A stretch of 64,000 nt of DNA from Dendrobates tinctorius (GCF_039654945.1 NW_027361716.1:21142001-21206000), one strand, 5' to 3'; numbered from the stretch's first letter, positions 3,300-37,272 are shown. Notes: generated by a model not told the origin, from the sequence alone. Made by a program: numbers and translations.

Positions 3300-4734
3300 T
3301 GTGGGGAGGAGGACTCCCAGACAGTGAATGGGCAGGTACCCAGGGTACTGACAGCAGGGTTCCTGAGGGAACGATACTGGGAGGGCAGTAAAAGGAAAGA
3401 CTTGACTGAAGTTGTCAGGGAAACAGGGGGCGGGGCAAGTTTAAAGGGAGCAGGGGGCGCGCTGAAGTGGCAGTTGATAGAGAGCCGGACAACAGACAGG
3501 GAGCCGTGTGAGACAGAGAGAACCGAGGGAGCGGACGGTGTGTTGTGGAGAGACCGACAGGGGCCTGTGAAAGAAAAGCTGCGGACTCACCGACACGTGA
3601 GACTTGAGAGCTGGTCACCGGCGGTCGCTCCCCTCATACGGTCACATACAGCCGCCCCCGCTGTTTCCTGCCGTGTTGGGGCAAGTCCACGACCTCTACT
3701 GACTGCTGCGATGACAGACCATTCCTTTACAGCGGTCAGGACACAGCCCCCCTGCCTTCTCCCTCAGCTGCGGCCCTGTCATCACCGGGCCCAGGAGGCG
3801 CCACCTCGCTACAGGCGGCAGGAGAGGCCCCTGTCCGGTTTGCTAAGGGGCCCCAAGCAGAGGTTGGTGAACAGTTATATTTAGAGACTGCGTCATAACT
3901 CCGCGGTGGGACGAGAGCCGCAAGGAGACGCCTGTTGCGCCCCACCGGCATCGTTTCTTCAGGGCCTGTTGTGCCCCACAGGCATCGTTTCTTCAGGGCC
4001 TGTTGCGCCCCACCGGCATCGTTTCTTCAGGGTCTGTTGTGCCCCACCGGCATCGTTTCTTCAGGGCCTGTTGCGCCCCACCAGCATCGTTTCTTCAGGG
4101 CCTGTTGTGCCCCACCGGCATCGTTTCTTCAGGGCCTGTTGCGCCCCACCGGCATCGTTTCTTCAGGGCCTGTTGTGCCCTACCAGCATCGTCTCTTCTG
4201 GGCCTGTTGCGCTCCACCGCCCCAGTTTCTTCAGGGCCTGGTGTGCCCCTCCGGCATCGTCTCTTCAGGGCCTGATGCGCCCCACCGGCACCATTCCTCT
4301 TCAGGGCCTGTTGCACCCCACCGGCATTGTTTCTTCAGGGCCTGTTGCGCCCCACCAGTATTGTCTCTTAAGGGCCTGTCAAGCCCAGTTCCGTCCTGGA
4401 ATATCGAGGCATCAAGGCAGCCGCATCAGTGACCCCTACGCGGCCACACTTGTGATCCTAACAGACCCCCTGGAAGGATAAGTTTAATATAGGAGATAAG
4501 GACCCGTAGTTTGGTCATACGTGGCCTATAGCACCGGGGCAAACCGGGTTAATCGCATTACAATAAGGAAGTGTTGTTATTATTGTTGAGTCCCTGCGTG
4601 GACTAGTTTGTTGTTAACACTTTTGGTTTGCTCAATATAGCCCTAGCGGCTACAGTTTTATAAAAGTTTATTCCACAAACCACACTCAGTCTCGTGTCTC
4701 GTCACTGCATCCTGCGAACCTGCTGAACCCTACA
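3300..4734 (+). mobile_element. Probable 3' LTR of the Gypsy element
   Basis: Purine tract agggtggggag (3289-3299) is followed by TGTGGGG. The segment ends CCCTACA (imperfect terminal inverted repeat), with an ATAAAA signal near 4660. No second LTR in the window to confirm. Confidence 0.6.
3928..4380. repeat. 34-bp minisatellite (~13 copies) inside the putative LTR
   Basis: Unit gggcctgttgtgccccaccggcatcgtttcttca; the ORFs across it show 34-aa periodicity. Confidence 0.95.
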
Positions 4735-8253: not shown

Positions 8254-9272
8254 AGCACAGCCACAGAATTAACTAAGCCTAAAGAGATAAATGGGAAAGT
8301 TAAACTGCCCCGGAGTAGAACCCCAAAGGAATAGATAGCCCCCGAACATATATTGCCGGTGAGACAAGATGAAGCACAAAACATAGGCAGAGAATAGAGT
8401 AAGCAAATGATGGGGCCCAAACTGTCTAGATAGAACTGGACAGGAAAGGATACTGTCTGCGATCACGCAAAAAAAACCTAAGAAAAATCCAACACGTCTG
8501 ATATGCAAAAATACTGAGGCCACACGACCTCTCCCCACTAAATCAGAAGTCTGGTATGAACTGGTTACTAAAAAGACTAACATACACTGTGGCATATGGA
8601 GCAGGGTCCAGCACAGGTCCCAACAGGGAACCAGGCTGAACTAACACCAGCTAAGCAAAAATCAGAGACAAGCAAAAATGGATCCAATGCAAAAAAAGAT
8701 TCAAGAAGACAAATAACTTATCTGAAAGATGCAGGACGGAGCAGGAGACAAGCAGACTTCAGAATATTTTCAGGAAGCAAACCAAATCACCTGCAAGAGC
8801 TGAGGGAAGGTTGTTCACTTAAATCTCCCCAGTCTGTAACACCTGACCTCCAATCATCCTGCTCAAGTGATTGACTTCTATCAGCTAGACCAGCTCCATT
8901 ACCAGTGGCAGCCACCAGAGGGAGCCCAAACTCAGAAGCAAGGTTAAAAGTGTTCACAACAGTACCCCCCCTTGAGGAGGGGTCACCGAACCCTCACCCA
9001 TGGACACCAGGCCGATCAGGATCAGGAAAGGCGTGAACCAATCTCTGGGCATGAGTGTCCGAAGCAAAGACCCAAGAATTATCCTCCTGACCATAACCTT
9101 TCCACTTGACAAAGTACTGGAGTCCCCGTCTAGCCAGACGAGAATCCAATATCTTCTCTACTTCATACTGCAGATTACCCTTAACCCCAATACAGGATCA
9201 GGGGGCGCAGCCATGGGAACTACTGGCTCCACAAACCTTTTCAACAAAGATTTATGAAATACGTTGTGAATG
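8254..9272 (-). mobile_element. 3' fragment of a chromovirus (sushi-like Gypsy): integrase end, chromodomain, PPT and truncated LTR
   Basis: Minus strand reads IHNVFHKSLLK, then QYEVEKILDSRL..LQYFVKWKGYGQEDNSW. PPT ...gggggggtac precedes LTR start TGTTGTGAA at 8961. The LTR resembles 34460-35200. Confidence 0.85.
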
Positions 9273-9404
9273 ATGGTGGTGGGGGAGGAGGCAATGATTG
9301 AGGTGGTGGAATGGGCAGTGATGGGGTGGTGGGGGAGAATGATAGGGGTGGTGGGGGAGAAGGCAATGATGGAGGTGGTGATGAGGACAATGATGGGAGT
9401 GGAG

Positions 9405-10235
9405 AGGGGCTGCATTATACTTTATGAGGGGGCTACACTATATTCTGTGGGGGGACTGCATTATTCTCACGGGACTACATTATATTCTGGGGGTCTACAT
9501 CATACTATATGAGGGGGCTACTGTATACTCTATGGGGGTTGCATTATATTCTGTGGTGGGGTTGCTTTATTCTCTCAGGGAACTACATTATATTCTGGAG
9601 GGGCTACATATTACTATATGAGGGGGCTACACTATATCGGGGCTGCATTATATTCTGTGGTGGGGCTGTATTATTCTCTCAGGGAACTACATTATATTCT
9701 GGGGGGCTACATCATACTATATGAGGGGGCTACAGTATACTCTGAGGGGCTGCATTATATTCTGTGGTGGGGCTGCATTATTCTCTCGGGACTGAATCAT
9801 ATTCTGGGGGGCTACATATTATTATATGAGGGGGCTATAGTATACTCTATGGGGGGACTGCATTATATTCTGTGGTGGGACTGCATTACTCTCTCAGGGG
9901 ACTACATTATATTCTGGGGGGCTACATCATACAATATGGGGGGGCAGCATTATGCCCTATGAGGGGGCGACAATATACTCTATGGGGCGCTGTATTATAT
10001 TCAGTGGTGGGGCTGCATTTTACTATATGAGGGGGGCTGCATTATACCCTATGAGGGTGCTACATTATGTTCTATGGTGGGGACTGCGTTATACCTTATG
10101 AGGGGGTTGCATTATATTTTGTGGGGTGCTGCATTATATTTTATGAGGGGGGCTACATTATATTCTATGAGGGAGGCTACATTATATTCTATGAGGGGGC
10201 TACATTATATTCTATGAGGGGGCTACCCCTCTATG
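9405..10235. repeat. Degenerate ~23-24 bp minisatellite
   Basis: Repeated ggggctacattatattctatgag-like units. Confidence 0.85.
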
Positions 10236-11339
10236 ATTCTACCCCAACCCTTGCTATATAATTAAGACGTGTACTACCTTATATTATACCCTGATATTAG
10301 CGTGTCTCAACACACAATTGGTGGTCTTGAATTTATGTCTATGTAGCTACATGATGGGCTGCATGAATGATTTTCTCTGGTGGGCCCAAGGTGCTCCAGT
10401 CCGACGCTGTCAGCATATATCACCTAAAAAGCGCAGTCAGGGAGTCAAGCCAAAGATGTCATGGATGTCCATGATAAGAAGGAAGCAGTCCCGAAACCAG
10501 AGAGAGGTGAGAGGAGCCCCACACTATTGCTGCGGAGGCAGCTTCGTCAAGGGGAGTGACATTGGTGCTCTTGCAGTATCTATTACCCATTTATTTTGTT
10601 TTAGCCCCACTAATAGGCTATTATACCTTGGGCTGTTTACCATCATATTTCTCTCTCGTTGGCCACCACATTACATGTATATATATTGTGTACACTCCTT
10701 TACATTCCAGCTGTCAGGATCCTGTCAGCGTTGGCAAACTGCCACGGCTGGGCAGGGTGACTTACCCACACTACTGGTGAGCCCGGGGTTCGATACTACA
10801 GTGAAAGTTCAAGCAGACAGGACCTGCGACACTGAAAGTAGTAAGGAGTACAAGAACCTACGATCATGTGACTGCAGGGGGCGGGGCTTAGCGTCCTACT
10901 GCTGCAGATGTAATATAGTTACTGCAGAGATACTGTAGTAGAGGAGAGGGAAATGCAGGTCAGACAAGCAGAGGTCATACACAGAGAGGGCAGTGCGGTA
11001 CCAGAGGGACGAGCAGAGAATAGTCAAGTCACAGGCAGAGAGTCATACACAGAGAGGGTAGCGCAGTACAAGAGGGACATGCAGAACTCGTAACAGGGAC
11101 GGAACCGGTTCAAAACCAAACAAGCAACAAGTTATCAGGCACAAGGCACATGTACGCAAGAGGTCAACTAACTCAGCCGAGGGCAGGAGTATAACTGACA
11201 CTGGACCTAGTTCGAGTGGCCACTAAATCACTAAATAGCCGCCCTCTGCCAGAGAGGGGCAGAAACAATTAACCCCTGTCTTACCAGGAGGGGCCAAAGA
11301 CAAAACCCCGTCCTGGATCATGACAGTACCCCCCTCTCA

Positions 11340-14300
11340 ACGGGGGGGCCACTGGACCCCAGGGTCTCTCAGGATACTTGGCATGAAATGCCCGGACCAA
11401 CCGATCCGCATGAACCGATCGGGCAGGAACCCACGACCAGTCCTCAGGACCGTAGCCTTTCCAATGCACAAGATATTGAAGAGAACGACGGACCAAATTG
11501 GAGTCAACAATTCGTTCCACCTCGTGCTCAGACTGCCCGTCTACCAAAACCGGTGGCAGGGAAGACAATAATCCCTCCCCACAGGACCCCACAGGTTTCA
11601 AAAGGGCCCTATGGAACACATTGGGGATCCATAGAGACGGCGGGAGACGCAACCGAAAAGCCACCGGGTTAACCGCCTCGGTAATTTCATAGGGACCAAT
11701 AAAGTTAGGTCCAAGCTTCGCAGAGGGGACCTTGAGCCTTATATTCTTGGCAGACAACCATACCTTATCCCCAACCTGGAACACCGGCCCCACGGACCAT
11801 TTTTGTCTGCAAAAAACTTATATTTAGCCTGAGCCTTCGTAATGATACTCTGGACTTCCCGCCATACCTCCCCTAACTGCTGGATAGTCTCATCTGCTCC
11901 AGGACACCCAGAGTCCAAACGGGAGAACTCTCCAAAATGTGGATGAAACCCATAGTTGCAGAAAAATGAGATGTACCCGTAGACTGGTTAATGCAGTTGT
12001 TAAACGCAAACTCGGCCAAAGGTAACACCAATCATCCTGTCGGGCTGAGGTCAGGCAACGCAGAATTTGCTCCAGAAACTGATTGGTCCGCTCAGTTTGC
12101 CCATTAGTCTCTGGATGATAAGCGGATGAAAAAGACAGACCAATACGCAACCTCTTACAAAATGCCCTCCAAAATCTGGAAACAAATTGTACCCCCCTAT
12201 CAGACACCATATTCAAGGGTACCCCATGCAACCACACCACATGCTCAACAAACATTCTGGACAATGTTTCCACATTAGGTAGAGCCGCCAAGGGTACAAA
12301 ATGTGCCTACTTACTAAACCTGTCCACCACTACCCAAATGACGGTATTACCCTTGGAAGGGGGAAGATTGGTGATGAAATCCATGGACAAATGGGTCCAT
12401 GGTCTACCAGGAATTGGCGGTGGCACAAATTCCCCGGCTGGCCGGTTATGGGGGGTTTTCGCACGGGCACATACATCACAAGCAGACACAAATTCCCCAA
12501 CATCAGAGGCTAAAGAAGACCACCAGAATACCCTAGCGATGGCCTTCCGGGTAGCCAAGATCCCTGGATGTCCACCCAGAACTGAGTCGTGGATCTCCCG
12601 AAGGACCTTGAGACGAAATTGAGCTGGCACAAAAGTTTATCCACCGGCTTAGCCAGAGGGGCAAGAGACTGAGCTTCCCAAATCGCCCGCTCCAACACAT
12701 TAGAAATACCTGCCACCACCACCCCAGGCTGAAGAATGGAGGATGGAGGTTTGGGGGGGACACCGGATCCAGACTGCGTGACAAGACATTTTTGGATCCT
12801 GGCCGAAAAGTGATGGAGAACTGGAATCGGGAAAAAAAAGTGACCATCTAGCCTGTCTAGGAGTCAACCTTTTAGCTGACTCAATGTAAGCTAGGTTCTT
12901 GTGGTCCACAATTACGGTTATAGGATGGACAGCCCCCTCCAAAAAATGCCTCCATTCTTCAAAGGCTAACTTCACGGTCAGAAGTTCTCGATTCCCAACA
13001 TCATAGTTTCTCTTCGCAGGGGAGACTTTCTTAGAGAAAAAGGCATAGGGTCTCAAATTAGTCAAAGTGGCGGGTCCTTGGGACAACACCGCCCCCACCC
13101 CCACCTCTGAGGCGTCCACCTCAACAATAAATGGTTCAGAAGGGTCCGGTTGAATAAGAACCGGAGCAGACATGAAACATTTTTTTAAAAACTGAAACGC
13201 CGCTATCGCTGCCGCTGACCAATTCTTGATATCGGCCCCCTTTTGAGTCATATCTGTGAGAGTTTTAACTACCTGTGAGAACCCCCTTATAAACTTGCGG
13301 TAATAATTAGCGAATCCTAGGAAATGCTGCAGAGCCTTCAAATCACAAGGTTGAACCCAATCAACAATGGCCTGCACCTTATTAGGATCCATGCGATACC
13401 CCTCAGCAGACACAATGAATCCCAGAAAAGACAGTTCCTGAACAAAAAATAAACATTTCTCTAGCTTAGCAAAGAGACAGTTCTCCCGGAGCCTTTGGAG
13501 AACTACCCGAATATGACCAATGTGAGCCTGTTCATCAGGTGAGTAGATAAGTATGTCATCCAAATACACAACCATAAAACGTCCAATAAAATCAGAGTAC
13601 ACATGATTGATGAAATTTTGGAAGACTGCTGGTGCATTGGTCAGACCGAAAGGCATGACCAAATTCTCAAACAACCCTTCAGTAGTGAGAAAAGCAATTT
13701 TCCACTCATCTCCCTCCCGGATCCGGATAAGGATATATGCTCCCCGTAGATCTAATTTCGAAAACCACTTAGGCCCAGACAACTGGTTGTACAAATCAGG
13801 AATAAGTGGGAGGGGGTAAGTATTTCTCACAGTTATCTTGTTTAACTCTCGAAAATCGAGGCATGGGCGCAAACCACCGTCTTTTTTTTTACGAAAAAGA
13901 ACACCACCGCCATGGGAGAGACAGAAGGATGACTGTGTCCTTTACGAAGACTCTCGGAAATGTATTCTTTCATAGCAGCCCGCTCGGGACCCGAAAGGTT
14001 ATACAAGCGGGCCTTGGGCAATTTAGCACCTGGAACCATGTCAATGGCACAATCAAATGGGCGGTGTGGTGGTAAAACTTCAGCCTCTTTTTCGGCGAAA
14101 ACGTCCGTATAGTCCTTCAGGTACTCCGGAATACCTTCCACACCAACGGACGACACAGACACAGTAGCAAGACATCTTTCAGAACAATTAGGTCCCCATT
14201 TAACAATATCCCGGGAACCCCAGTCAATAATCGGGTTATGCCTTTGCAACCAGGGAAACCCTAACACCAGACCAGCAGAGAGGTTATCCAAAACAAAACA

Positions 14301-18503: not shown

Positions 18504-19837
18504 CAGTGGTGTAACTATAAAGTTATGGGCCCCGGTGAAAACTTTCAAAAGGGGGCCCCCCCATGCCAAAATACACACATATCTCAGCTCCGTACACCTC
18601 GTAACACCCGGCTCTGCTCCGTACATCTCGTACACATGCGGCTCCTCTCCGTCCACCTCATACACATGCGGCTCCGCTCCGTACACCTCGTACACATGCG
18701 GCTCCTCTCTGTCCACCTCGTACACATGCGGCTCCGCTCCGTACACCTCGTACACACGCGGCTCCGCTCCGTACACCTCGTACACACGCGGCTCCTCTCC
18801 GTCCACCTCATACACATGCGGCTCCGCTCCGTACACCTCGTACACATGCGGCTCCGCTCCGTACACCTCGTACACATGCGGCTCCTCTCTGTCCACCTCG
18901 TACACATGCGGCTCTGCTCCGTACACCTCGTACACACGCGGCTCCTCTCTGTCCACCTCGTACACATGCGGCTCCGCTCCGTACACCTCGTACACATGCG
19001 GCTCCTCTCTGTCCACCTCGTACACATGCGGCTCCGCTCCGTACACCTCGTACACACACGGCTCCTCTCCGTACACCTCGTACACACGTGGCTCCTCTCC
19101 GTACACCTCATACACACGCGGCTCCGCTCACCTCGTACACACGCGGCTCCGCTTCGTACACCTCGTACACATGCGGCTCCTCTCCATACACCTCGAACAC
19201 ACGCGGCTCCTCTCCCTACAACTCGTACACATGCAGCTCCACTCCGTACACCTCGTACACACACGGCTGTGCTCCATACACCTCGTACACACATGGCTCC
19301 GCTCTGTACACCTCATACACACATGGCTCCGCTCCATACACCTTGTACACACATGGTTCCACTCACCTCATACACACACAGCTCTGCTCCGTACGCCTTG
19401 TACACACACGCTCCGCTACATCCACCCTGTAAATCCCTCCTGACCCCACACAGAAACTACCTCATCCAGCACCATGACAACCAGCACAGCAGAGTCCTGC
19501 AGAAAACGAGGCCCCTGATCATGTGACCCCCTGACTCCTCCCCTCCTGTGACCTCATCACAGGTCCTGTGCGCACAGAAAAGAACAGCCTAGGTAGTCAT
19601 TGCAGGCTGAGGGGGGCTGCGGTGGGTCTATCTAGGAGGGTGAGGATGGGGTGCATGGGGGGGCGTTGCGGCTCAGTACAGTGCAAGAAGAATAGACTCC
19701 GCGGGGGGTCAAAAACGGGATTGTCCTGCGAGAATCGGGACGGTTGGGAGATATCTTGGTCTGACCTGCCGGGCCCCTGACTCCCCCCAGGCCCGGTTGC
19801 AGTGGAGACTGCTGAGACCGTGGTAGTTACGCCCCTG
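18504..19837. mobile_element. Non-autonomous hAT-like DNA transposon
   Basis: Terminal inverted repeats CAGTGGTGTAACTA / TAGTTACGCCCCTG; no clean 8-bp TSD seen. Confidence 0.6.
18585..19420. repeat. 30-bp minisatellite inside the hAT-like element
   Basis: Unit tacacatgcggctccgctccgtacacctcg, ~27 copies. Confidence 0.95.
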
Positions 19838-21567: not shown

Positions 21568-23243
21568 TCAGCAGGCAGTATCACACAGGATAGGATTAGA
21601 TACACAGCTGAGCAGTCAGTATCACACAGGATAGGATTAGATACAGGGCTCAGCAGTCAGTATCACACAGGATAAGATTAGATACACAGCTCAGCAGTCA
21701 GTATCACACAGGAGAGGATTAGACACATGGCTCAGCAGGCAGTATCACACAGGATAGGATTAGATACACAGCTGAGCAGTCAGTATCACACAGGATAGGA
21801 TTAGATACACGGCTCAGCAGTCAGTATCACACAGGATAGGATTAGACACATGACTCAGCAGACAGTATCACACAGGATAGGAATAGATACACAGCTCAGC
21901 AGTCAGTATCACACAGGATAAGATTAGATACACAGCTCAGCAGTCAGTATCACACAGGATAGGAATAGATACACAGCTCAGCAGTCAGTATCACACAGGA
22001 TAGGATTAGACACACAGCTCAGCAGTCAGTATCATACAGGATAGGAATAGATACACAGCTCAGCAGTCAGTATCACACAGGATAGGATTAGACACATGAC
22101 TCAGCAGACAGTATCTTACAGGATAGGAATAGATACACAGCTCAGCAGTCAGTATCACACAGGAGAGGATTAGACACATGGCTCAGCAGGCAGTTTCACA
22201 CAGGATAGGATTAGATACACAGCAGCAGTCAGTATCATACAGGAAAGGATTAGACACATGGCTCAGCAGACAGTATCACACAGGATAGGAATAGATACAC
22301 AGCTCAGCAGACAGTATCACACAGGAGAGGATTAGACACATGGCTCAGCAGTCAGTATCACACAGGATAGGATTAGATACACAGCTCAGCAGTCAGTATC
22401 ATACAGGATAGGATTAGACTCATGGCTCAGCAGACAGTATCACACAGGATAGGAATAGATACACAGCTCAGCAGTCAGTATCACACAGGAGAGGATTAGA
22501 CACATGGCTCAGCAGTCAGTATCACACAGGATAGGATTAGATACACAGCTCAGCAGTCAGTATCACACAGGATAGCGATAGATACACAGCTCAGCAGTCA
22601 GTATCACACAGGAGAGGATTAGACACATGGCTCAGCAGGCAGTATCACACAGGATAGGATTAGATACACAGCTCAGCAGTCAGTATCACACAGGATAAGA
22701 TTAGATACACAGCTCAGCAGTCAGTATAACACAGGATAGGAATAGATACACAGCTCAGCAGTCAGTATCACACAGGATAGGATTAGACACATGGCTCAGC
22801 AGACAGTATCATACAGGATAGGAATAGATACACAGCTCAGCAGTCAGTATCACACAGGAGAGGATTCGATACATGGCTCAGCAGTCAGTATCACACAGGA
22901 TAGGATTAAATACACTGCTCAGCAGTCAGTATCACACAGGATAGGATTAGATTCACTGCTCAGCAGTCAGTATCACACAGGAAAGGATTAGACACATGGC
23001 TCAGCAGGCAGTATCACACAGGATAGGATTAGATACACAGCTCAGCAGTCAGTATCACACAGGATAGGATTAGATACACAGCTCAGCAGTCAGTATCATA
23101 CAGGATAGGATTAGACACATGGCTCAGCTGACAGTATCACACAGGAAAGGATTAGACACATGGCTCAGCAGTCAGTATCACACAGGATAGGATTAGATAC
23201 ACAGCTCAGCAGTCAGTATCACACAGGATAGGATTAGACACAT
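21568..23243. repeat. 41-bp satellite array, ~41 copies
   Basis: Unit ggataggattagatacacagctcagcagtcagtatcacaca. Confidence 0.97.
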
Positions 23244-23356
23244 GCCGCGTGCTTAGTTACCCGCTATTTACCTTGGACACCAGCATCCTCGCTGGTACTG
23301 ATCGCTGGTGAGTCTGCCTGTTTGAGAGCTCACCAGCGATCATGTAGCGATGCAAG

Positions 23357-24076
23357 TGTGGGGATGGTGACTTGATGGATAGACGTGACTGGCAGTAGGA
23401 GGGGACGGTTTGTGCACCAGAGACGGAGATTGACAGGATAGAAGGGTGACATCTGGGAAAGGTAGATAGGAGGGTGTAGTACTGAGAAATGACCACAAGA
23501 TGGCAGGGGAGAGTAGTTGAGGACTGAACATCAGCTTATGGCTCAAGAAAAGGCTTAGTCATGGGGGGCGGGGAGCTAGGAACCCAAGAGGGGAATTCCC
23601 GGTGAGAGAGGGGATAAATAGAAAAGGGTAGGGTTCCAGGCAGGTTAGTCCAGGGAGGAGCTCGGTAGAAGATGGTGAAGAGAGAAGAGCTCGACCAGGG
23701 GATGGACAGCAAAGAGACAGTCAGGGGGGTGGCCCTGACCTGACGGACCGCAGGACAGACGAGGCCCCGGGGGTACCGATTGGACGACGACCTCGGGCAG
23801 GTGAAGTGCTAGCGGTAGATTGGTCTAGGACAGCCCCAGCAAAAGATCCGTGAGGGACGTTACTTCGACTGGAGCAAAGGTGCAGCTACCCGGGCCTGGA
23901 GACAGAGAATTGTAAAGTGGCTGCGGTGCGTGGCTATGGTCGTCAGGAGGACGACGTATAAATCCGGAACTGTTACAACCGAAATCTGTCTCTGCCTCGT
24001 CCTTGCATCGCCTAGTGTCTGTGTCATCCAGACAGGGTAAGCAGCGGTCCACCCCCCTATCCGGCCCCCTACCACA
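23357..24076 (+). mobile_element. Solo LTR, same family as the LTR at 26260-26981, inserted in a MITE-like repeat
   Basis: TGTGG...CCACA termini; colinear high similarity to 26260-26981; flanks carry accagcgatc MITE-like repeats; TSD not clear. Confidence 0.85.
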
Positions 24077-24590
24077 CACCAGCGATCCTGACCAGGTCGT
24101 ATCGTTGTCGGGATTGCTGGTGCGTCGTTTAGTGTAACGGGAAACTTAGGGCAAATCCCTCAACGCTCTGATTCTGACCCCAGGGTTCTATTAAAGGGAT
24201 CATTGGCATGCAAGTCATGGAAAATCCACTCAGTGCTCTGGTTCTGATGCCAGTCTCTCTTAAAGGGATCCCCGGTATGGAAGTGAGGGCAAATTCACTC
24301 TGCGCTTTGGTACTGACCCCAGGTCTCTCTTAAACGAATCTCCGGTATGGAAGTTAGGGTAAATCCCTCAGCACTCTGATTCTCACCCCAGGCTTCTATT
24401 AAAGGGATCATTGATATGGAAGTCAGGACAAATCCACTCAGTTCTCTGGTTCTGACACCAGGCTGACGGGATGATGTGGGATATTAGGCGTATTAGTCTG
24501 GTGGCTCTGGCTGATGGGATGACGTGGGATATTAGGGGTAGTAGTCTGGTGGCTCTGGCTGATGGGATGATGTGGGATATTAGTGGTAGT

Positions 24591-27500
24591 AGTCGCCTCC
24601 CCGCACGGCCTCCTGCATTGCTGTAGACCCGGCTGCGGAGGGTTCTGCAGCCTCCGCCGGGCTGAGCGACGCCGCTGTCCACGTCCCCGAGCCACCCCGC
24701 CCAGCGGCGCCACATCCGGTGTCGCCGGTGCGGGACAAGCCCGCGGCCAACGCTGCTGCGTTCCGCCTGCCAGCAACGGCCTATCCCCTGAAGCCGACCG
24801 CCACTCCGGCCCCATCCATGACTCCGTTTGCGGCCTGCCCCGCGGCCGCATCTGCGTCACCCCCGGGGTCGGCCACGGCCTGCTTGTCGGGCCCTGCGGT
24901 ATACCCCTCGGGAACCACGGCTGCCTCTGCCCACCACCCGGCCCCAGCGGCTGCTGGGTTGCCGGAAGCTGCGGCCGCATCTGCCCCGCTCTCAACCCTG
25001 GCCGTGTCCCACCCACTAGACTCCGGGGCCTACACCGGACCCTCCGTCTGGGTCATGGAGGTCATACGGAAGAAAAAGGCCAGGGAGCAGGAAGTTTGGA
25101 ACCTGCTCCATGAGAGAGGGGAGGCTGGCATGGCGGCTTCACGATCTATGGGGCGGCTCGTGTACACCAACTTGGAGAAGGGATAAGGGTTCATTCGGGA
25201 CCTCGCAACCAGCCAGAAGGTGCACATCAAGGTGACCTCCATCCGTCACGGCCGGGCATTGTGGGCGGGGAACCTGGTAGCGTACTACAATGAGTACTGT
25301 CCCCACGGCTACTACGCAGTAGCCGTAATCGCTGAACCCGAAGACCACGAGCCCTCATAAAAAGGACCCCTAGAGACACTCCCTGCATCCCGGGAGCTCT
25401 ACGGCTGTGAAGCCCCCTTACTACTGATGAGACATCGGCTGTCAGGCGATGGTCCGGACTGTCGGGATTTCGCTGCACCGTTGTGCAGGCCACGAGGACA
25501 GTTTTTCATCCAGGTTAAAAAGAATGTTTTTATTGTTTGATCTTTTTCTCCTGACATAGCGGGGATGTGGGGGAGAAGATACTAATGCTAAAGGGAGGGG
25601 GAGCATTTATATTCGGTTTTAAACAAAGATGTGGTGTTGTGAGAAAATGTTGTGTTAGGAAAAAACAAACAAAAAAAAGGGGGGGGATTACTCCGGTTAA
25701 GTAACTCCTATTGTTATTAAAGTAGTGGTAATTATATATACAGTATGTTAAGAGTTGATTTAATGAATAGTGTGTGTAACCAAAAAAAAAAATGTGTAAC
25801 AGGTCCCGGGTACGAGGTAGATGTAACGAAGACGCCGACCATGACTCTTTTAAGTGATGGACAAAGAGACGAGAGATATAGAACCAGACAGTGGTCCATC
25901 AGTCAGGTCCCCGACACCACGGACACCCCAAAAGGACGCCAATGATGACCCGGTAGGCAAAAGGCCTCGGTCATGGCGTCCCGGACAGCTGAAGGTAGTA
26001 GAAGGGGAGAGTAGTGGGAGGTACACGCCATAGAGTAGTTCGGGTGGACCTCGCCAACCTGAAAGAAGTTGTCACGTGGTATGCGCGCCAGCGAGTAGTA
26101 GTAGGCTGCTCGGAGCATGGTGGTCCCGTTTTGGTTCGGCCCCCGTGGGCGGCGGGTTTGGCCCAACGACCGGTCTGACAGCAGACTGTGGACAAGCTTT
26201 AGGATGACGTAGATAGGAAGTACGATTGTCGGGACGACAATGGACAAAGGAAGGGGGAGGGTGGGGAAGGTGACTTGATGGACAGACTTGACTGGAAGTA
26301 GGAGGGAATGGTTGGTGCACTATGGACGGAGATTGACAAGGACAGCAGGGTGATAGCTGGGAAAGACAGACAAGAGAGTGCAGTACCTAGAAATGACCAC
26401 AAGATGGCAGGGGGGAGTAGTTCAGGACTCAACAGCAGCTTAGGGCTTGAGAAACGCTTAGTCATGGGGGGCGGGGAGATAGGAACCCAGGAGGGGAATT
26501 CCCGGTGAGAGAGGGAATAAATAGGACTGGTTGGGGTTCCAGGCAGGCTAGTCCTGGGAGGAGCTTGGCAGAAGACGGAGAACAGCGAAGAGCTCGACCA
26601 GGGGACTGACAGGAAAGAGACAGTCAGGGGGGTGGCCCTTACCCGACGGACCGCAGGACAGACGAGGCCCTGGGGGTACCGATTGGACAACGACCTCGAG
26701 CAGGTGAAGCACTGGCGGTAGATTGGTCTAGGACAGCCCCAGCGAAAGATCCTCGAGGGACGTTGCTTCGACTGGAGGAAAGGTGCAGGTACCCAGGCCT
26801 GGAGACGGAGAACTGTAAAGAGGCTGCGGTGCGTGGTTGTGGTCGTCAGGAGGACGACGAATAAAATCCGGAACTGTTACAGCTGAACTCTGCCTCCGTC
26901 TTGTCCTTGCTTCGCCTGGTGTCTGTGTCGTCCAGACGTGGTAAGCAGTGGACCACCCCCCAATCCCGGCCCCCTACCACATTTGGCGTAGTCGGCAGGA
27001 TTGCCGCCGCTAATACGATATCTTCCGCGGCAGGCCAGCGCCAGGAGGACTCCAAAAGAACTGTTCAACTGTGGATTACAAATACCAGTGGATTACAAAA
27101 CTGCTCACCTGTGGATTATAATTTGGAGACTTGGTTCCGGTTCATCGTTTGTCATCAGAGGATCCGGGGTGGTACCAGAAGCCGATCAACATGGCTGTGG
27201 TACTCCAACGCCAGGAAGAGGCCCTGGCATTTGCAGTTATTTTGGACGGACTGGGGCAATCTCCAAGTTACCCCTGTGGGGAGCAGTGTATGTCTGGAGA
27301 CCACCGCCCCTCATACTGGACCCGGGAAGATGGGTGGAGAAGCCGACCATCGCTCCACCCAAGGGAGGGAGTGGCCCGGGTGGGAAGACCGGCTGCACTG
27401 TTTGGCGCCATTCGATTGCTGTACACCGGACGGGATGCGACGCTGCAGTTGCCGTGACCTCGGACGCCTGGAATGGAGGTGGCGTCAAGAGGTCGGATCT

Positions 27501-27690
27501 CGCTGGGAGACCTGCTTTCTGGAGCCACAGACAGCCCCCCGGACATCGGACGGACAGGAGGAGCGACCGCGGGCCCTGCGGGATCAGCCGCCGAAGACAT
27601 CACCTGGGAGCCTCCCTGCGGGACCCACGAGCCTGGTGACTGGCCCTGCTGGACGGCCGTGTGAAGATCGGAGGTTGCGGGAGGAGTCGC
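24591..27690 (+). mobile_element. Circularly permuted non-autonomous LTR retroelement (3' internal, PPT, single LTR 26260-26981, tRNA-Ser PBS, 5' internal)
   Basis: PPT aaaggaagggggag lies before the LTR and PBS TGGCGTAGTCGGCAGGAT (26984-27001) lies after the same LTR. AGTCGC occurs at both outer ends. No RT or integrase motifs. Confidence 0.85.
24593..25360 (+). pseudogene. C-terminal part of the LTR-element ORF with a cold-shock (OB-fold)-like domain; one in-frame TAA
   Basis: Ala/Pro-rich linker, then GRLVYTNLEKG*GFIRDLATSQKVHIKVTSIRHGRALWAGNLVAYYNEYCPHGYYAVAV, matching the CSD pattern G-x-V-x-x-N-x-x-KG[YF]GFI...V-x-V/I...L-x-x-G-x-x-V-x-Y...G-x-x-A-x-x-V. Confidence 0.65.
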
Positions 27691-30100
27691 GGGATGATGT
27701 GGAATATTAGGGGTAGTAGTCCGGTGGCTCTGGCTGACGGGATGATGTGGGATATTAGGGGTAGTAGTCCGGTAGCTCTGTCTGACGGGATGATGTGGGA
27801 TATTATAGTGAATGTGGCTATGCGGAGTGGGCGGGGCTATACACTTTGCTTTATATATAGATATACTCATTATAATTTGTTAGAACTAAGCGTAGTTACC
27901 GTATTTTTTGGACCATAAGATGCACTTTTTTCCCCAAAAATTTTTGGGGAAAGTGGGGGTGCGTCTGTGGCGCCCCCAGGAGTATGGTCGCCACAGTGGC
28001 ATTACCTTCCTCCTAGGGAGAGTGATGTCATGCCTGGAAGCAATGAAGGGTCTCTCTGGCAGTTAATCACTGCATGCAACACAGTTTCCACTCCGGGTCA
28101 ACAGAGGGAGCTCTGAACCCAGAAATGAGGGGGAGGAGCTGTCTCTGGGGGCCAGGAAGGAGTGAGTCAGTTAGTGTGAGGAGGGCGTCATGTGCAGACG
28201 TGGAGGAGAAGAGATGGGGAGACTGAGGAAAGTGGAGAGCTCAGTCCCAGTGATAGCGGATGATCTGGAGCCTGGTCTCCAAGGGTGTATGGATACTAAC
28301 GGTCCTGCAACAGAAACCAGAGGAATAGGAAGCTGTAAATGCCCTATTACCACATAATCCTCGGAGGCACAACAGCGACGGGTGAGCCAAGAGAGATAGA
28401 AGGCTACGGCTGTCTGCCATGCGAGTGGAGTGTGGATAACATCAGAAAGGAGGAACTCCAGTGTAACTCAGTACTGGGAGTACTTCATAGAGAGCGCTAG
28501 TAAAGAGACTGCACAACCCATCTGCCAGAGTGATTCCTGATTTTCTTCCAGGCTAACCAGCTCCTGTGCCATCTGTACTCAGGACCCTGGACTGCATTTG
28601 CCAAGTAAAGGTAAAGAAATTGCATCTATTGTGTCCTTGCCTTCATGCTGCAACCTCCCCGGCACTGCTACATCTCTATGCCTGACACTGCACCTTCCTT
28701 CCCAACACCCATCTACACTGCCCTGGGACAACAGCCCTGCCTGTGGAGGGTTATAACATCTTGGCTGCACCACACCATCTGTCCCAGCAGATCTGTCTGC
28801 AGCGTCGGCTTAACATCTTCATTGCCGAACACCACAGGTGGCGTCACGAATCATCTATTCATAAACTTTATTCCATCACTTCACTCCCTTACATGGATGC
28901 CCAGGGCCACGGACCGGGTCACCGCTACTGTGACACTTCCCTGTGAAATACCGGCCCGGTACCGAGTACCCCACTGCCCTGGCGGGCGATCCATTTTGGC
29001 GTCACGAACAGGATTTACGGAGCCCGGTGTCCCCGGGTCTTGTGTGCCAGAGACTGTGCTGTGTGCTATGGACTATTTGTGAAAGTGCCACCATTATCCT
29101 GCTGCTTGGCGCGCGCGGGAAACAAAAGAGTCGGGCCGTTGTGGGCGGAGCCAGCCGAAGAGCACGAAGAAGTGAAGTGCCGCGCGGGAAGAAGTGACCT
29201 CGCGTGAGAGGTGGCAGAAGCTGAGGCCTGCAGCCGGTAAGCCTGCTCAACCCCGGGGCCTGGCTAATGTTAACTGGGGGGAGAGAATGTCAGAGGCATG
29301 CGCCGATGCAGTGGCGGATGCCCCCGCCAACCCCTCAGCGCCGCAAGATGCAGGGCCCAACGCGGCTGCGGCTCCAATAGCACCCACCGCAGCGGTCCCC
29401 ATAATGCCGCTGTCTGTGCCTTACATACCGGGAGCAGCATGGCTACCGCAGTATTCATGGGAGTCACATACCCTGAGTGACTTCAAAGAGAGACTGTGCA
29501 GTTTGTTTGAAGTCTATCCTCTGTCTGAAGGCCAGAAAGTGAACATCCTTAATGGGCAGCTAACAGGTGCAGCACAGAGGGAAGTAAAAGCCTGGCAGGA
29601 CACTGATAAAGAGACTGTTACAAAGATTCTGGCCAAGCTAAGAAGCACCTTTGACACTCGCCCTGCAGCTGAGATCAAGATGAGATTCTTTGGGTGTAAG
29701 CAGAAAGCCCAGGACAGTATACGGGACTATGCTCTTAACCTGCAGGAGGCGCTGCGAGCCGTCAAGCAGATTTACCCAGACAGTGTGAAAGATGGAGACG
29801 GACTGTTAAAGGAACAGTTTATTGAAGGACTCTTATTCAGCACCCACAGAGCACAGCTGCGCATCATAGCCCTACAGAACCCTGATCTGGACTTTGCTGA
29901 TTTCAAAGACAGGGCTATCCGGGTGCTGCATGAACCAAATGTCAGCCATCCAGCGCCCCCTAGGCGCCCAGCGATTACATACCACCAGGAAGCAACATCT
30001 TTCCCTTCCATCCCTGTGGAGGCTGATGCACAGACTCTGGACAAAGATCCATCTGCAGAACTGCGTCTTCAGGTCCAGGAGTTGACCAATGGTATGGCTG

Positions 30101-31351
30101 TGGGTCGCCCTCCCAGGGCTGTGGGGTATTCGGTACCGGGCCGGTGTCAGTGGGATGTGTCACAGTGGCGGTGACCCGGACCGTGGCCCTGGGCGCCCAA
30201 GTAATAGAAAGATGTGAGTTAAATGAATAGTTTGTGACGCCACCTGTGGTGTTCGGCAAGGGAGGTGTTAAGGTGTTAAGCCGACGCTGCATGCAGATCC
30301 TCCGGGACAGATGGTGTGGTGCAGCAATGATGGTATAGCCCTCCACAGGCAGGGCTGTAGTCCCAGGGCAGTGTAGATATGGAGACACTTAGGTGATGTA
30401 GTGTCTGGCGCAGGGGATGTAGCAGTGTCAGGCAGACGCAGGAAGGAATGGAGGACACCAGGGTATGTAGTTCCAAAGCTTTACTCACAGTCTGTAGTGC
30501 CCGCTTCTGTGCCGTGTCCTCCGGGTCAGGGACTCAGTCAACCCCCAGGCAAGATGGAAAGATCCCTTCCACACTCTGCCAACTTATGTACCTTTCCTGA
30601 ACGTCTCCTCTATAGCGCCTTTAAGTGTGAAGATCTCCAGTACCGTGTTACACTGGAGTTGCTCCTGACAGATGTTCCCAAGAACTCTACTTGCACGGCA
30701 GACAGCTGTAGCCTGCTTCGGGGACTCTCTACTCCTAAGTCCCGGCTCTCTATCCGTATTGCTGTTGTGCCCTCAAGTCTTAGATGGGAGTAGTGAATTT
30801 ACAGCCCACTACTCCCCGGCCTTGCTCTTAGAACATCTAGGCAAGGTTCTTCCTCTAACCCACGTCCTCTGTGTTCCCTTTTACTCCTACGTTCCGTACT
30901 TGTCCTTTTCCCTTCTATGGAAGCTCAGGCTTCAGGTCAACGTCCTTCTCCTTCTTTCCTTTCCCGTGCCAGCTGGCTCAGGTCACTGAGGCAGCTGCAG
31001 CACTCCTTCCTTCATCCCTTCTTCCAGGGATCCCCACTCCTCCCGAGTGGCTTCCTTCCTCACTGACCTCCTGTCAGACTGACCTGTCATCCTAAACCAT
31101 CCCGCTCATATATATACTCTGAACTCCACCCACCTCCCAGCACGTCTAGTGTTCCAAGCAGGGAACCACCAAAGGTGCTCTGCCTCTCTCTAAGTAAAGA
31201 GCCGCAATGTGGTTATGCTGAACTACTCTATTGTGTGGAGTGCGAGTGTTGGAGCGTGGTCAGGAGCCTCCAACTTACCTGGATGGTGGGGCACCACACC
31301 TTAGGAGAAGGTGCAGTACCTCTGTGGCGACTGAGCCTCAGGGGCGCCACA
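30101..31351 (-). mobile_element. Solo LTR in antisense orientation, related to the host 5' LTR; 4-bp TSD GCTG
   Basis: Reverse complement starts TGTGGCGCCCC and ends GGGCGACCCA; GCTG at 30097-30100 and 31352-31355; removing it restores gag (GMAALAK). Confidence 0.92.
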
Positions 31352-35200: not shown

Positions 35201-35369
35201 AGTCCTCGTCCTCAGGTGGCAGGTCTCTGCCATTTAGATCAGCTTCATTACCTGCTGTCACCACCAGGAACATGGACGCCGGGAAGATGGACGCCGGTCC
35301 GGGGACGGCGTATGCTCAGGTTCAGATCTCGTCCCGAGATCTCGTTGCCAAGATTTGAATCTTGTCTCC

Positions 35370-35750
35370 CGCCAGCTGCCCCAGCACAGCCCACCTGCCC
35401 CAGCCCAGCACAGCTTCCACAGCCCAGCTTCCCCAGCACAGCCCAGCTGCCCCAGCACAGCCCACCTGCCCCGGCACAGCCCACCTGCCCCAGCACAGCC
35501 CAGTTGCCCCAGCACAGCCCACCTGCCCCAGCACAGCCCAGTTGCCCCAGCACAACCCAGATGTCCCAGCCCAGCTGCCCCAGCACAGCCCAGCTGCCCC
35601 ATCACAGCCCAGTTGCCCCAGCACAGCCCATCTGCCCCAGCACAGCCCAGCTGCCCCAGCACAGCCCAGCCCAGCTGCCCCAGCACAGCCCAGCTGCCCA
35701 GCACAACCAACCTGCCCCAGCACAGCCCACCTGCCCCAGCACAGAGCTGC
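35370..35750. repeat. 19-bp minisatellite
   Basis: Unit ccccagcacagcccacctg. Confidence 0.9.
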
Positions 35751-35999
35751 CGCCACCGCACCAGCCTGGACCACTAAATGACCCCTGTGACCACTCCTCC
35801 ACATGTGCCGGATCTCTTCCCAGGTAAGCTGAATTCGGACTGTAAGACGGCCCTCCATTTGACACATTATTATTTTTTCCCTATTTTCCTTCTGAAAATT
35901 TGGGGTGCGTCTTATGGTCCGGTGAGTCTTATAGTCCGAAAAATACGGTAGTTACTATGCCCGGGCAGCGCCGGGCTCTTCATCTAGTATATATGTAAA

Positions 36000-37272
36000 C
36001 TAGCTGAAGAGCCCGGCGCTGCCCGGGCATAGTAACTAACTGTGGTTATAGTAAATTATAATTATCCTCCATCCCATAGACCCGTGCCCATATACCCATC
36101 ATACATATCCACGATCCCATAGGCCCGTGCCCATATACCCATCATACATATCCTCCATCCCATAGTCCCGTTCCCATATACCCATCATACATATCCCCAT
36201 CCCATAGTCGAGTGCCCATATACCCATCACACATCCTCCATCCCATAGTCCCATGCCCAAATCCCCATCATACATATTCGCCATCCCATAGTCCCATGCC
36301 CATATACCCATCATACATATTTGCCATCCCATAGTCGAGTGCCCATATACCCATCACACATCCTTCATCTCACAGTCCCATGCCCATATACCAATCATAC
36401 ATATCCTCCATCCCATAGTCCCGTGCCCATATACCCATCATACATATCCTTCATCCCATAGTCCCGTGCCCTTATACCCGTCATACATATCCTCCATCCC
36501 ATAGTCCAGTGCCCATATACTCATTACACATCCTCCATCCCATAGTCCCGTGCCCATATACCCATTATGACATCATCATCACCATGGCAACGGTTATGAC
36601 ATAACCGTCACCATTGCAACCTATGACGAATCAGCGTTGCCCATATACCCATCATACATATCCTCCATCCCATAGTCGAGTGCCCATGTACCCATCACAC
36701 ATCCTCCATCCCATAGTCCCATGCCCATATAGCCATCACACATCCTCCATCCCATAGTCCCATGCCCATATAGCCATTATACATATTCGCCATCCCATAG
36801 TCGAGTGCCCATATACCCATCACACATCCTTCATCCCATAGTCCCATGCCCATATACCAGTCATACATATCATCCATCCCATAGTCCAGTGCCCATATAC
36901 CCATCACACATCCTCCATTCCATAGTCAACCAATATGACATCATAATGAGCTGCGGGGCTTGCAACCTATGATGACATCAGCGTCGCCATGGCAACTATT
37001 GTGACATTATAATGAGGGGCGGGTCTTCATACGCACACACTTTCCCCATTATGTAGAGAGGGGCATTATGACATCATAATGAGGGGCGGGGCTTGACGCG
37101 CACACACTTTTTCCCCAGTATATAGATAGGGGCAAAATTGTTTGGTGAATTGGAACGCTCAGGGTTAAAATTTCGCCTCACAACATAGCTTAGGACGCTC
37201 TCGGGGTCCAGACGTGTGACTGTGCCAAATTTTGTGGCTGTAGCTGCGACGGTGCGGATGCCTATCCCGGAC

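What the first reader, a model, noticed from the sequence alone, without database searches (positions are those of the whole stretch)
24591..27690. Circularly permuted LTR element: apparent integration of a 1-LTR circle without integrase
Seen: one LTR (26260-26981) has a PPT directly upstream and a PBS directly downstream, and no LTR bounds the outer ends. Both outer ends carry AGTCGC (24591-24596, 27685-27690). Joining them fuses ...EDRRLREE to SPPRTASCIAVDP... in frame, giving ~374 codons from ATG 27330 to 25360 with one internal TAA. The host 48-bp repeat has lost ~17 bp at the site, shares AGTC microhomology, and has no TSD. Inference: an extrachromosomal 1-LTR circle of ~3.1 kb was opened inside its ORF and captured by end-joining repair or during Helitron replication.
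Basis: partly seen in the sequence, partly recalled or inferred. Interest (0 to 1): 0.82.

Follow-up and report, generated by a model that had tools for sequence, protein, structure and literature searches.

The report
Permuted frog LTR element beside solo LTR
An old, broken frog retroelement sits in satellite DNA in "rotated" order (tail, single LTR, head) with end-joining-type junctions, as if a circular copy had been pasted in without integrase. A lone LTR of the same family 515 bases upstream suggests the circle popped out next door.

Summary
The anatomy is real. Window 24595-27689 reads 3' ORF part, 3' UTR, PPT, one LTR (26260-26981), tRNA-Ser-type PBS, 5' ORF part. It interrupts a 48-bp satellite, which lost 16 bp and shows no target duplication.

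A natural canonical relative in Dendrobates tinctorius (L001, protein P0001) has LTR-PBS-ORF-PPT-LTR with a 4-bp duplication. It carries both window ORF pieces in one 431-aa protein. Internal lengths match (2373 vs 2372 bp), so the block is one complete, circularly permuted unit with no pol or other large segment missing.

It is a solo LTR with four extra host bases, a degenerate 4-bp duplication.

The true ATG is 27191, and the copy has two frame changes and one stop.

Best reading: a one-LTR circle was captured by end joining, and it most likely came from LTR-LTR recombination at the neighbouring solo LTR rather than from cDNA.

Not settled:
- Base-level continuity at AGTCGC; the relative has about 77 bp (31 aa) more there.
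- Read support for the two junctions.

I found no evidence for Helitron involvement. An unchecked note (s1-386218) reports another permuted LTR insert elsewhere in this genome.

The parts
23243..23356 (.). Host hairpin repeat, upstream flank of the solo LTR
   Evidence: Aligns to L001 4394-4530 (reverse complement), where the two flanks of LTR1 are contiguous.
23357..24076 (+). LTR1: solo LTR of the same family. No PBS follows it. It is flanked by CAAG / CACC, four extra host bases that form a degenerate 4-bp target duplication.
   Evidence: 87.6% identical to LTR2 over 725 nt. The joined flanks have 4 more bases than the uninterrupted host repeat in L001.
24077..24147 (.). Host hairpin repeat, downstream flank of LTR1
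   Evidence: 86% identical to L001 4394-4466.
24148..24462 (.). 69-bp tandem repeat (host satellite)
   Evidence: TRF: 4.5 copies. Word depth is about 100 times that of the element.
24461..24594 (.). 48-bp tandem repeat, left flank. It ends at unit position 38 (..GTAGTAGTC).
   Evidence: TRF: 2.8 copies. Register shown. Uninterrupted arrays appear in contigs (table 5).
24591..24596 (+). Left AGTCGC. AGTC is shared with the 48-bp unit (microhomology).
24595..25360 (+). 3' part of the element's ORF, matching P0001 residues 189-430. It has an internal stop at 25184-25186 and an ORF stop at 25358-25360. The C-terminus is cold-shock/OB-like.
   Evidence: tblastn: 49% identity, E=6e-64. Pfam CSD E=4e-4 on the P0001 C-terminus, below the cut-off.
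25361..26245 (+). 3' untranslated region of the element
   Evidence: 70-75% identical to L001 11297-12175.
26246..26259 (+). Polypurine tract AAAGGAAGGGGGAG
   Evidence: Identical to L001 12162-12175, directly before its 3' LTR.
26260..26981 (+). LTR2, the single LTR in the middle of the permuted block
   Evidence: The family base at 26260 is T, giving a TGTGG start (table 3).
26984..27002 (+). Primer-binding site TGGCGTAGTCGGCAGGATT. It is complementary to the 3' end of tRNA-Ser as I recall that tRNA.
   Evidence: L001 has TGGCGTAGTCGGCA at the same place. The tRNA identity rests on memory and on earlier scan notes.
27191..27689 (+). 5' part of the ORF, matching P0001 residues 1-157, with two frame changes near 27312 and 27397
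   Evidence: tblastn finds three stretches in three frames. The motif CLAPFDCCxPDGMRRC is 78% identical.
27685..27690 (+). Right AGTCGC. The element's sequence runs to 27689, and C 27690 also fits the repeat.
27690..27805 (.). 48-bp tandem repeat, right flank. It resumes at unit position 7.
   Evidence: TRF: 2.4 copies, 91% identical to the left array.

Best explanation
A circular DNA holding one LTR plus the whole internal region of a non-autonomous LTR retroelement was opened inside the ORF. The element's only ORF ends in a cold-shock/OB-like domain. Cellular end joining then joined the opened circle into a break in a 48-bp satellite array, without integrase.

The most likely source of the circle is local. 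A full-length copy once sat at 23357 in the hairpin repeat. Recombination between its two LTRs left the solo LTR (LTR1) and released exactly such a one-LTR circle, which re-entered the chromosome 515 bp downstream.

An equivalent route gives the same order. An illegitimate exchange at GGGAGGAGTC / GGTAGTAGTC releases a circle of 3' part, LTR and host. That circle then re-enters by homologous recombination at the remaining LTR.

Shown: the permutation, the completeness of the unit, the junction features, and the solo LTR with its 4 extra host bases.
Inferred: the circle itself, its local origin and the order of events.
For: 1. Canonical order. P0001 (431 aa, D. tinctorius) holds both window ORF pieces in one protein. 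Its locus L001 is LTR 9028-9803, PBS, ORF 10001-11296, PPT, LTR 12176-12456, with a 4-bp duplication TCTG.
2. One complete unit. Internal length is 2373 bp (708 + 1665) here and 2372 bp in L001.
3. Non-integrase junctions. There are no LTR ends and no duplication. The satellite lost 16 bp. AGTC is shared at the left junction, with 8 of 10 similarity between GGTAGTAGTC and GGGAGGAGTC.
4. Solo LTR. LTR1 is on the same strand, 515 bp away, and 87.6% identical. It sits in a host repeat whose uninterrupted form in L001 has 4 fewer bases at that point.
5. Chance neighbourhood looks unlikely. These are the only two LTR copies in 64 kb. A rough copy number from word depth is a few thousand LTRs per genome (the tool warns that depth is not a copy number).
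6. Age. Using L001 as outgroup, LTR1 has 39 private changes and LTR2 has 24. This does not differ significantly from equal age. CpG counts are 31 and 31.
7. LTR-LTR recombination is known to release circular DNA in yeast (PMC5173269). One-LTR full-length circles are a major form of LTR-element ecDNA (PMC12951756).
Against: - No same-subfamily canonical copy could be obtained, so continuity at AGTCGC is untested. The 70%-identical relative has about 77 bp (31 aa, P0001 158-188) with no counterpart here. Either a little was lost at opening or the subfamilies differ by an indel.
- No 'goes back' joint from 27689 to 24595 was among the 15 joints shown (146 hidden), and no junction-spanning contig was listed.
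- The 4-bp duplication at LTR1 matches at only 2 of 4 bases.
- LTR1 and LTR2 differ by 12.4%, which fits an old shared origin but equally fits two independent insertions.
- A clean break of a circle does not explain why AGTCG(C) is present at both ends. That needs a staggered break with fill-in, microhomology, or partly chance.
Confidence: 0.55

Rival explanations
1. A one-LTR circle made during reverse transcription (a dead-end by-product of an active element) was captured at a chromosomal break by end joining. The solo LTR upstream is an unrelated earlier or later insertion.
For: The permutation and junction features are the same as for the best explanation. One-LTR circles are abundant products of LTR-element replication (PMC12951756). 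The family is multi-copy, and its internal parts are covered by many contigs in four runs from two organisms.
Against: It leaves the same-strand, same-family solo LTR 515 bp away as a coincidence, with only two copies in 64 kb. Nothing in the sequence shows that the block was young or master-like when it was inserted.
Confidence: 0.22
2. No free circle was involved. A broken or stalled 3' end in the satellite switched templates by microhomology (AGTC) onto an element copy. It crossed from one LTR to the other by homology, copied about one unit and switched back. This could be replication-based repair of MMBIR type, or break-primed reverse transcription of element RNA with a strand transfer through R.
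For: Microhomology at the left junction and a short redundancy (AGTCG/C) at both ends fit copy-choice. The target deletion is typical of such repair. An unchecked scan note reports a 1.36-unit permuted concatemer of an LTR element elsewhere in this genome (s1-386218).
Against: It needs three or four switches. It gives no reason for stopping after almost exactly one unit (2373 vs 2372 bp internal length).
Confidence: 0.1
3. Assembly artefact: a chimeric read or a wrong path through repeats produced the rotated order.
For: The region is a mosaic of very high-copy repeats (table 2).
Against: Both junctions join non-homologous sequence (satellite to a moderately repeated ORF) at single points, which repeat-collapse does not create. 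A contig in run X2 matches 24707-24849 without any difference (table 8, record 9). That shows only that this copy, or one identical to it over that stretch, is present in that run, which may be the sample the window was assembled from.
Confidence: 0.07
4. Remnant of a tandem LTR-internal-LTR-internal-LTR array, trimmed by two later deletions.
For: Such arrays are known for LTR elements. LTR1 and LTR2 are in the same orientation.
Against: Host satellites (69-bp and 48-bp) lie between LTR1 and the 3' part, and deletions cannot bring them in. LTR1's two flanks are contiguous host sequence. Two independent deletions would have to end within 6 bp of the same point in the ORF.
Confidence: 0.03

Closest known systems
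Integrase-independent capture of retroelement DNA at chromosome breaks (Ty1 cDNA patches at breaks in yeast; integrase-defective retroviral DNA joined at double-strand breaks). Recalled from the literature; PMC2797772 appeared in the list but was not opened.
   Same: Retroelement DNA is joined to chromosomal DNA without LTR-end processing and without a target duplication. There are small target deletions and microhomology.
   Different: Here a whole, exactly one-unit permuted copy is fixed in a vertebrate germline. The probable donor is a chromosomal pop-out circle rather than fresh cDNA.
Solo-LTR formation by LTR-LTR recombination, with release of a circular by-product (yeast [Ty] circles, PMC5173269)
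   Same: A solo LTR with a target duplication is left behind. The released circle has one LTR plus the internal region, which is exactly the content of the block.
   Different: The circle is normally lost. Here it appears to have re-entered the chromosome 515 bp away.
One-LTR full-length ecDNA of LTR retrotransposons (Drosophila nomad, copia and others, PMC12951756)
   Same: The molecule has the same topology and content as the inferred intermediate.
   Different: Those circles come from reverse transcription and are described as rarely reintegrating. No integrated permuted copy is described in the passages I read.
Circularly permuted insertions taken as a sign of a circular intermediate (for example the 17-kb 'Region B' of wine yeasts). 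From memory; only mentioned in a hit.
   Same: The logic is the same: identical content in rotated order at an insertion site implies a circle.
   Different: The cargo and organism differ, and no LTR element is involved.

Membership tests
LTR retroelement (canonical, integrase-inserted copy) | Two LTRs in direct orientation bounding the internal region | tested here: not met
   The block has one central LTR, and its outer ends are ORF sequence. LTR1 is separated from the block by 515 bp of host satellite, and its own flanks are contiguous host sequence.
LTR retroelement (canonical, integrase-inserted copy) | Short target-site duplication at the ends (4 bp in this family: TCTG in L001) | tested here: not met
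   There is no duplication of satellite sequence at the block; 16 bp are lost instead. LTR1 does have 4 extra host bases.
Frog non-autonomous LTR family with a tRNA-Ser-type PBS and a cold-shock-like ORF (family of P0001/L001) | PBS TGGCGTAGTCGGCA after the LTR, PPT AAAGGAAGGGGGAG before the LTR, TG..CA LTR ends | tested here: met
Frog non-autonomous LTR family with a tRNA-Ser-type PBS and a cold-shock-like ORF (family of P0001/L001) | A single ORF homologous to P0001 over its whole length, with no gag, pol or env | tested here: met
   tblastn covers P0001 residues 1-157 and 189-430 in the two separated pieces. No Pfam family was found apart from a sub-threshold CSD match.
Cold-shock domain proteins (Pfam PF00313) | Score above Pfam's gathering cut-off (27 bits) | tested here: not met
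   The P0001 C-terminus scores 20.6 bits, E=4e-4, over profile positions 9-63 of 66. PDB cold-shock proteins match only at E 0.2-1.6. It is CSD-like, not a demonstrated member.
Captured one-LTR circle (end-joined ecDNA) | Content equals exactly one unit (one LTR plus the full internal region) in rotated order | tested here: met
   Internal length is 2373 bp here and 2372 bp in L001, and all segments are present in rotated order.
Captured one-LTR circle (end-joined ecDNA) | The two outer ends abut each other in canonical copies of the same subfamily | tested here: inconclusive
   Only a 70%-identical relative was available, and it has about 77 bp more at that point. No go-back joint was listed. 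Word searches and the metagenome scan gave nothing.
Helitron-mediated capture | Helitron termini, a hairpin before a CTRR end, and insertion between A and T | not tested
   No Helitron feature was looked for beyond reading the flanks. The flanks are satellites and a hairpin repeat found in other contexts.

The most novel reading that the evidence does not exclude
The circle thrown out when an LTR element collapses to a solo LTR is not always lost. It can re-enter the germline genome nearby by end joining. That would give LTR elements, including ones with no enzymes of their own, a DNA-level 'pop-out and paste' route needing neither reverse transcriptase nor integrase. If the second permuted LTR insert noted elsewhere in this genome (s1-386218, unchecked) is of the same kind, the route would be recurrent in this frog.
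Probability: 0.3. Interest if true: 0.7.

Novelty: new variant of a known kind. Interest (0 to 1): 0.45.

Why it matters
One-LTR circles and the circles released by solo-LTR formation are treated as dead ends. This locus may hold both the scar (the solo LTR) and the re-inserted circle. If so, it would be a natural, germline-fixed record that such circles can return to the chromosome through host repair. That bears on how ecDNA reshapes genomes and on how rearranged TE copies should be annotated. As it stands, this is one old, decayed copy in satellite DNA, and the inference rests on structure alone.

Tried and rejected
- Word-index protein searches with the N-terminal piece, the C-terminal piece and P0001 gave nothing beyond P0001 itself.
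- Pfam on the window's ORF pieces gave no family.
- A metagenome scan with a 20-mer conserved between the window and L001 gave five chance hits with no further similarity.
- The search of earlier findings by sequence was blank.
- Read laying with contigs of 4 runs at 85% likeness showed that the flanks are very high-copy satellites and that uninterrupted 48-bp arrays exist. It listed neither a go-back joint across the break point nor junction-spanning contigs. Most rows were hidden, so this is no evidence either way.
- ARAGORN found no tRNA gene in the window to check the PBS against.
- The tandem-array-plus-deletions reading was rejected, because host satellites lie between LTR1 and the block and LTR1's flanks are contiguous host sequence.
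- I also considered reading AGTCGC as a 6-bp target duplication made by something inserted into the element. Topologically this is the same as circle insertion, so I did not pursue it separately.

Full report
**What is in the sequence**

The region 23243-27805 reads, on the + strand, in this order:
- a host hairpin repeat
- an LTR (LTR1, 23357-24076)
- the continuation of the hairpin repeat (24077-24147)
- a 69-bp tandem repeat (24148-24462)
- 2.8 units of a 48-bp tandem repeat (24461-24594)
- 2.4 more units of the 48-bp repeat (27690-27805)

The block itself consists of:
- the 3' part of an ORF (24595-25360, internal stop at 25184)
- a 3' untranslated stretch
- a polypurine tract, AAAGGAAGGGGGAG (26246-26259)
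- one LTR (LTR2, 26260-26981)
- two spacer bases
- a primer-binding site, TGGCGTAGTCGGCAGGATT (26984-27002)
- a leader
- the 5' part of the same ORF (27191-27689)

AGTCGC stands at both outer ends (24591-24596 and 27685-27690). In both, TCG is a codon of the frame that is homologous to the relative described below. In register, the 48-bp unit is broken after position 38 and resumes at position 7, so 16 bp are missing and nothing is duplicated. AGTC at the left junction belongs equally to the repeat. The repeat's GGTAGTAGTC and the element's GGGAGGAGTC agree at 8 of 10 positions.

**Is the block really a rotated copy?**

The word-index protein searches were blank. The exhaustive search with the 120-aa N-terminal piece found one true relative, P0001. 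It is a 431-aa 'uncharacterized protein' of Dendrobates tinctorius.

P0001 contains both window pieces in a single reading frame. Residues 1-157 match 27191-27689, and residues 189-430 match 24596-25354 at 49% identity, E=6e-64.

Its locus, L001 (GCA_039654945.1), is a textbook LTR element:
- 5' LTR at 9028-9803
- PBS TGGCGTAGTCGGCA
- ORF at 10001-11296
- the same 14-nt polypurine tract
- 3' LTR at 12176-12456, internally deleted
- TCTG on both sides as a 4-bp target duplication

DNA similarity to the window is 70-75%, and the order in L001 is the canonical one. The internal region is 2372 bp in L001. In the window it is 708 + 1665 = 2373 bp. The block is therefore one complete unit in rotated order, and no pol or other large segment is missing.

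1. A second LTR copy exists. LTR1 is 87.6% identical to LTR2 over 725 nt, lies on the same strand, and ends 515 bp before the block.
2. The ORF starts at ATG 27191, not 27330. The 5' part changes frame twice, near 27312 and near 27397. With the stop at 25184, this copy is well decayed.
3. The ORF is not a recognisable Gag. Pfam finds nothing in the window pieces or in full-length P0001. The C-terminus of P0001 alone gives a sub-threshold cold-shock-domain match of 20.6 bits against a cut-off of 27. PDB cold-shock proteins match only at E 0.2-1.6.
4. Nothing I saw points to a Helitron. The flanks are satellites whose word depth is 100 to 1000 times that of the element, and uninterrupted 48-bp arrays are seen in contigs.

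**What LTR1 is**

No PBS follows LTR1. Its two flanks align to one continuous stretch of a hairpin repeat in L001 (4394-4530, reverse strand). The window has exactly four more bases at the insertion point: CAAG before the LTR and CACC after it.

This is what a 4-bp target duplication looks like after decay, with 2 of 4 positions still matching, and 4 bp is the family's duplication length. LTR1 is thus a solo LTR, the scar of an integrase-made insertion that later lost its inside by recombination between its two LTRs.

**Mechanism**

Call the segments as follows:
- A and A' are the two LTRs.
- B is PBS plus the 5' ORF part.
- C is the 3' ORF part plus PPT.
- D is the 515 bp of host sequence after LTR1.
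- E is the rest of the 48-bp array.

A normal insertion would read A B C A' D E. The window reads A D C A' B E.

The simplest path has two steps. First, LTR-LTR recombination leaves A D E and releases the circle B-C-A'. Second, the circle is opened between B and C and joined into a break between D and E.

A second path gives the same order. An illegitimate exchange between the similar 10-mers in the ORF and in the satellite releases the circle C-A'-D. That circle then re-enters by homologous recombination at the remaining LTR.

Either way the two non-homologous junctions have the marks of end joining, and the block is exactly one unit. A circle explains that naturally; copy-choice models do not.

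Release of circles by LTR-LTR recombination is documented in yeast (PMC5173269). One-LTR full-length circles are a main form of LTR-element ecDNA (PMC12951756).

LTR1 and LTR2 are the only copies of this LTR in 64 kb. A contig that matches this locus without any difference has depth of about 4, while the LTR bins sum to 13,000-50,000. That suggests a few thousand LTR copies in a genome of several gigabases. The tool warns that depth is not a copy number, so this estimate is rough. On those figures, a same-strand copy within 1 kb by chance would be expected well under 2% of the time, even allowing for clustering.

With L001 as outgroup, the differences between the two LTRs split 39 (LTR1) to 24 (LTR2), which does not differ significantly from equal age. 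CpG counts are 31 and 31. This is compatible with one origin but does not prove it.

**What remains open**

The relative has about 77 bp (31 aa, P0001 158-188; L001 about 10479-10555) between the points that correspond to the two window ends. I could not obtain a canonical copy of the window's own subfamily. The in-frame join and the repeated AGTCGC favour the first only mildly.

The single read-laying run listed no go-back joint across the break point and no junction-spanning contig. However, 146 joints and more than 3000 loose ends were hidden, so this is no evidence either way. The junctions are therefore not verified by reads. They join unlike sequences at single points, which assemblers do not invent from repeat collapse.

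**Earlier scan notes**

Earlier notes describe this family elsewhere in the same genome, as pol-less LTR elements with a tRNA-Ser PBS and a cold-shock-like ORF. One unchecked note reports another LTR element inserted as a permuted 1.36-unit concatemer (s1-386218). If that holds, rotated insertions may recur in this frog.

**Verdict**

It is incomplete, because the neighbouring solo LTR points to a chromosomal pop-out and local re-insertion. This is a new variant of known processes, of moderate interest, and testable with long reads, a family LTR tree and orthologous loci.

The pieces were searched apart and compared only with the natural protein P0001.

Noticed in passing
window 29278-30150 (+), with inverted repeats 28438-28946 / 30147-30676: A gag/PNMA-like ORF (Pfam PNMA E=1e-3, below the cut-off) sits between long inverted repeats that are 82-90% complementary.
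   Followed up: partly
window 27191-27689: The 5' ORF part carries a conserved Cys-rich motif, CLAPFDCCxPDGMRRCxC (78% identical to P0001 71-97). This is the best-conserved stretch of the N-terminal half and could be a metal-binding knuckle.
   Followed up: no
window 27966 onward: A very high-copy repeat starts here. About 200 contigs per run continue with unlike sequence before 27966, so this is the sharp 5' boundary of an abundant element.
   Followed up: no
window 18514-19454; 21568-23242; 35334-35785; 36011-36995: Four further tandem arrays, with periods of 30, 41, 19 and 43 bp. The 41-bp array ends 114 bp before LTR1. The whole neighbourhood is satellite-rich.
   Followed up: no
L001 9028-12456: This is a canonical copy of a related family in Dendrobates tinctorius with an intact 431-aa ORF, annotated only as an uncharacterized protein. 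It lies inside the range of a called SLAIN-domain gene. Its 3' LTR is internally deleted (281 vs 776 bp).
   Followed up: partly
window 23300-23345 and 24077-24125: The host repeat around LTR1 forms two hairpins: TGATCGCTGGTGAG...CTCACCAGCGATCA and CACCAGCGATCC...GGATTGCTGGTG. The same repeat is present in L001 at 4394-4530.
   Followed up: partly
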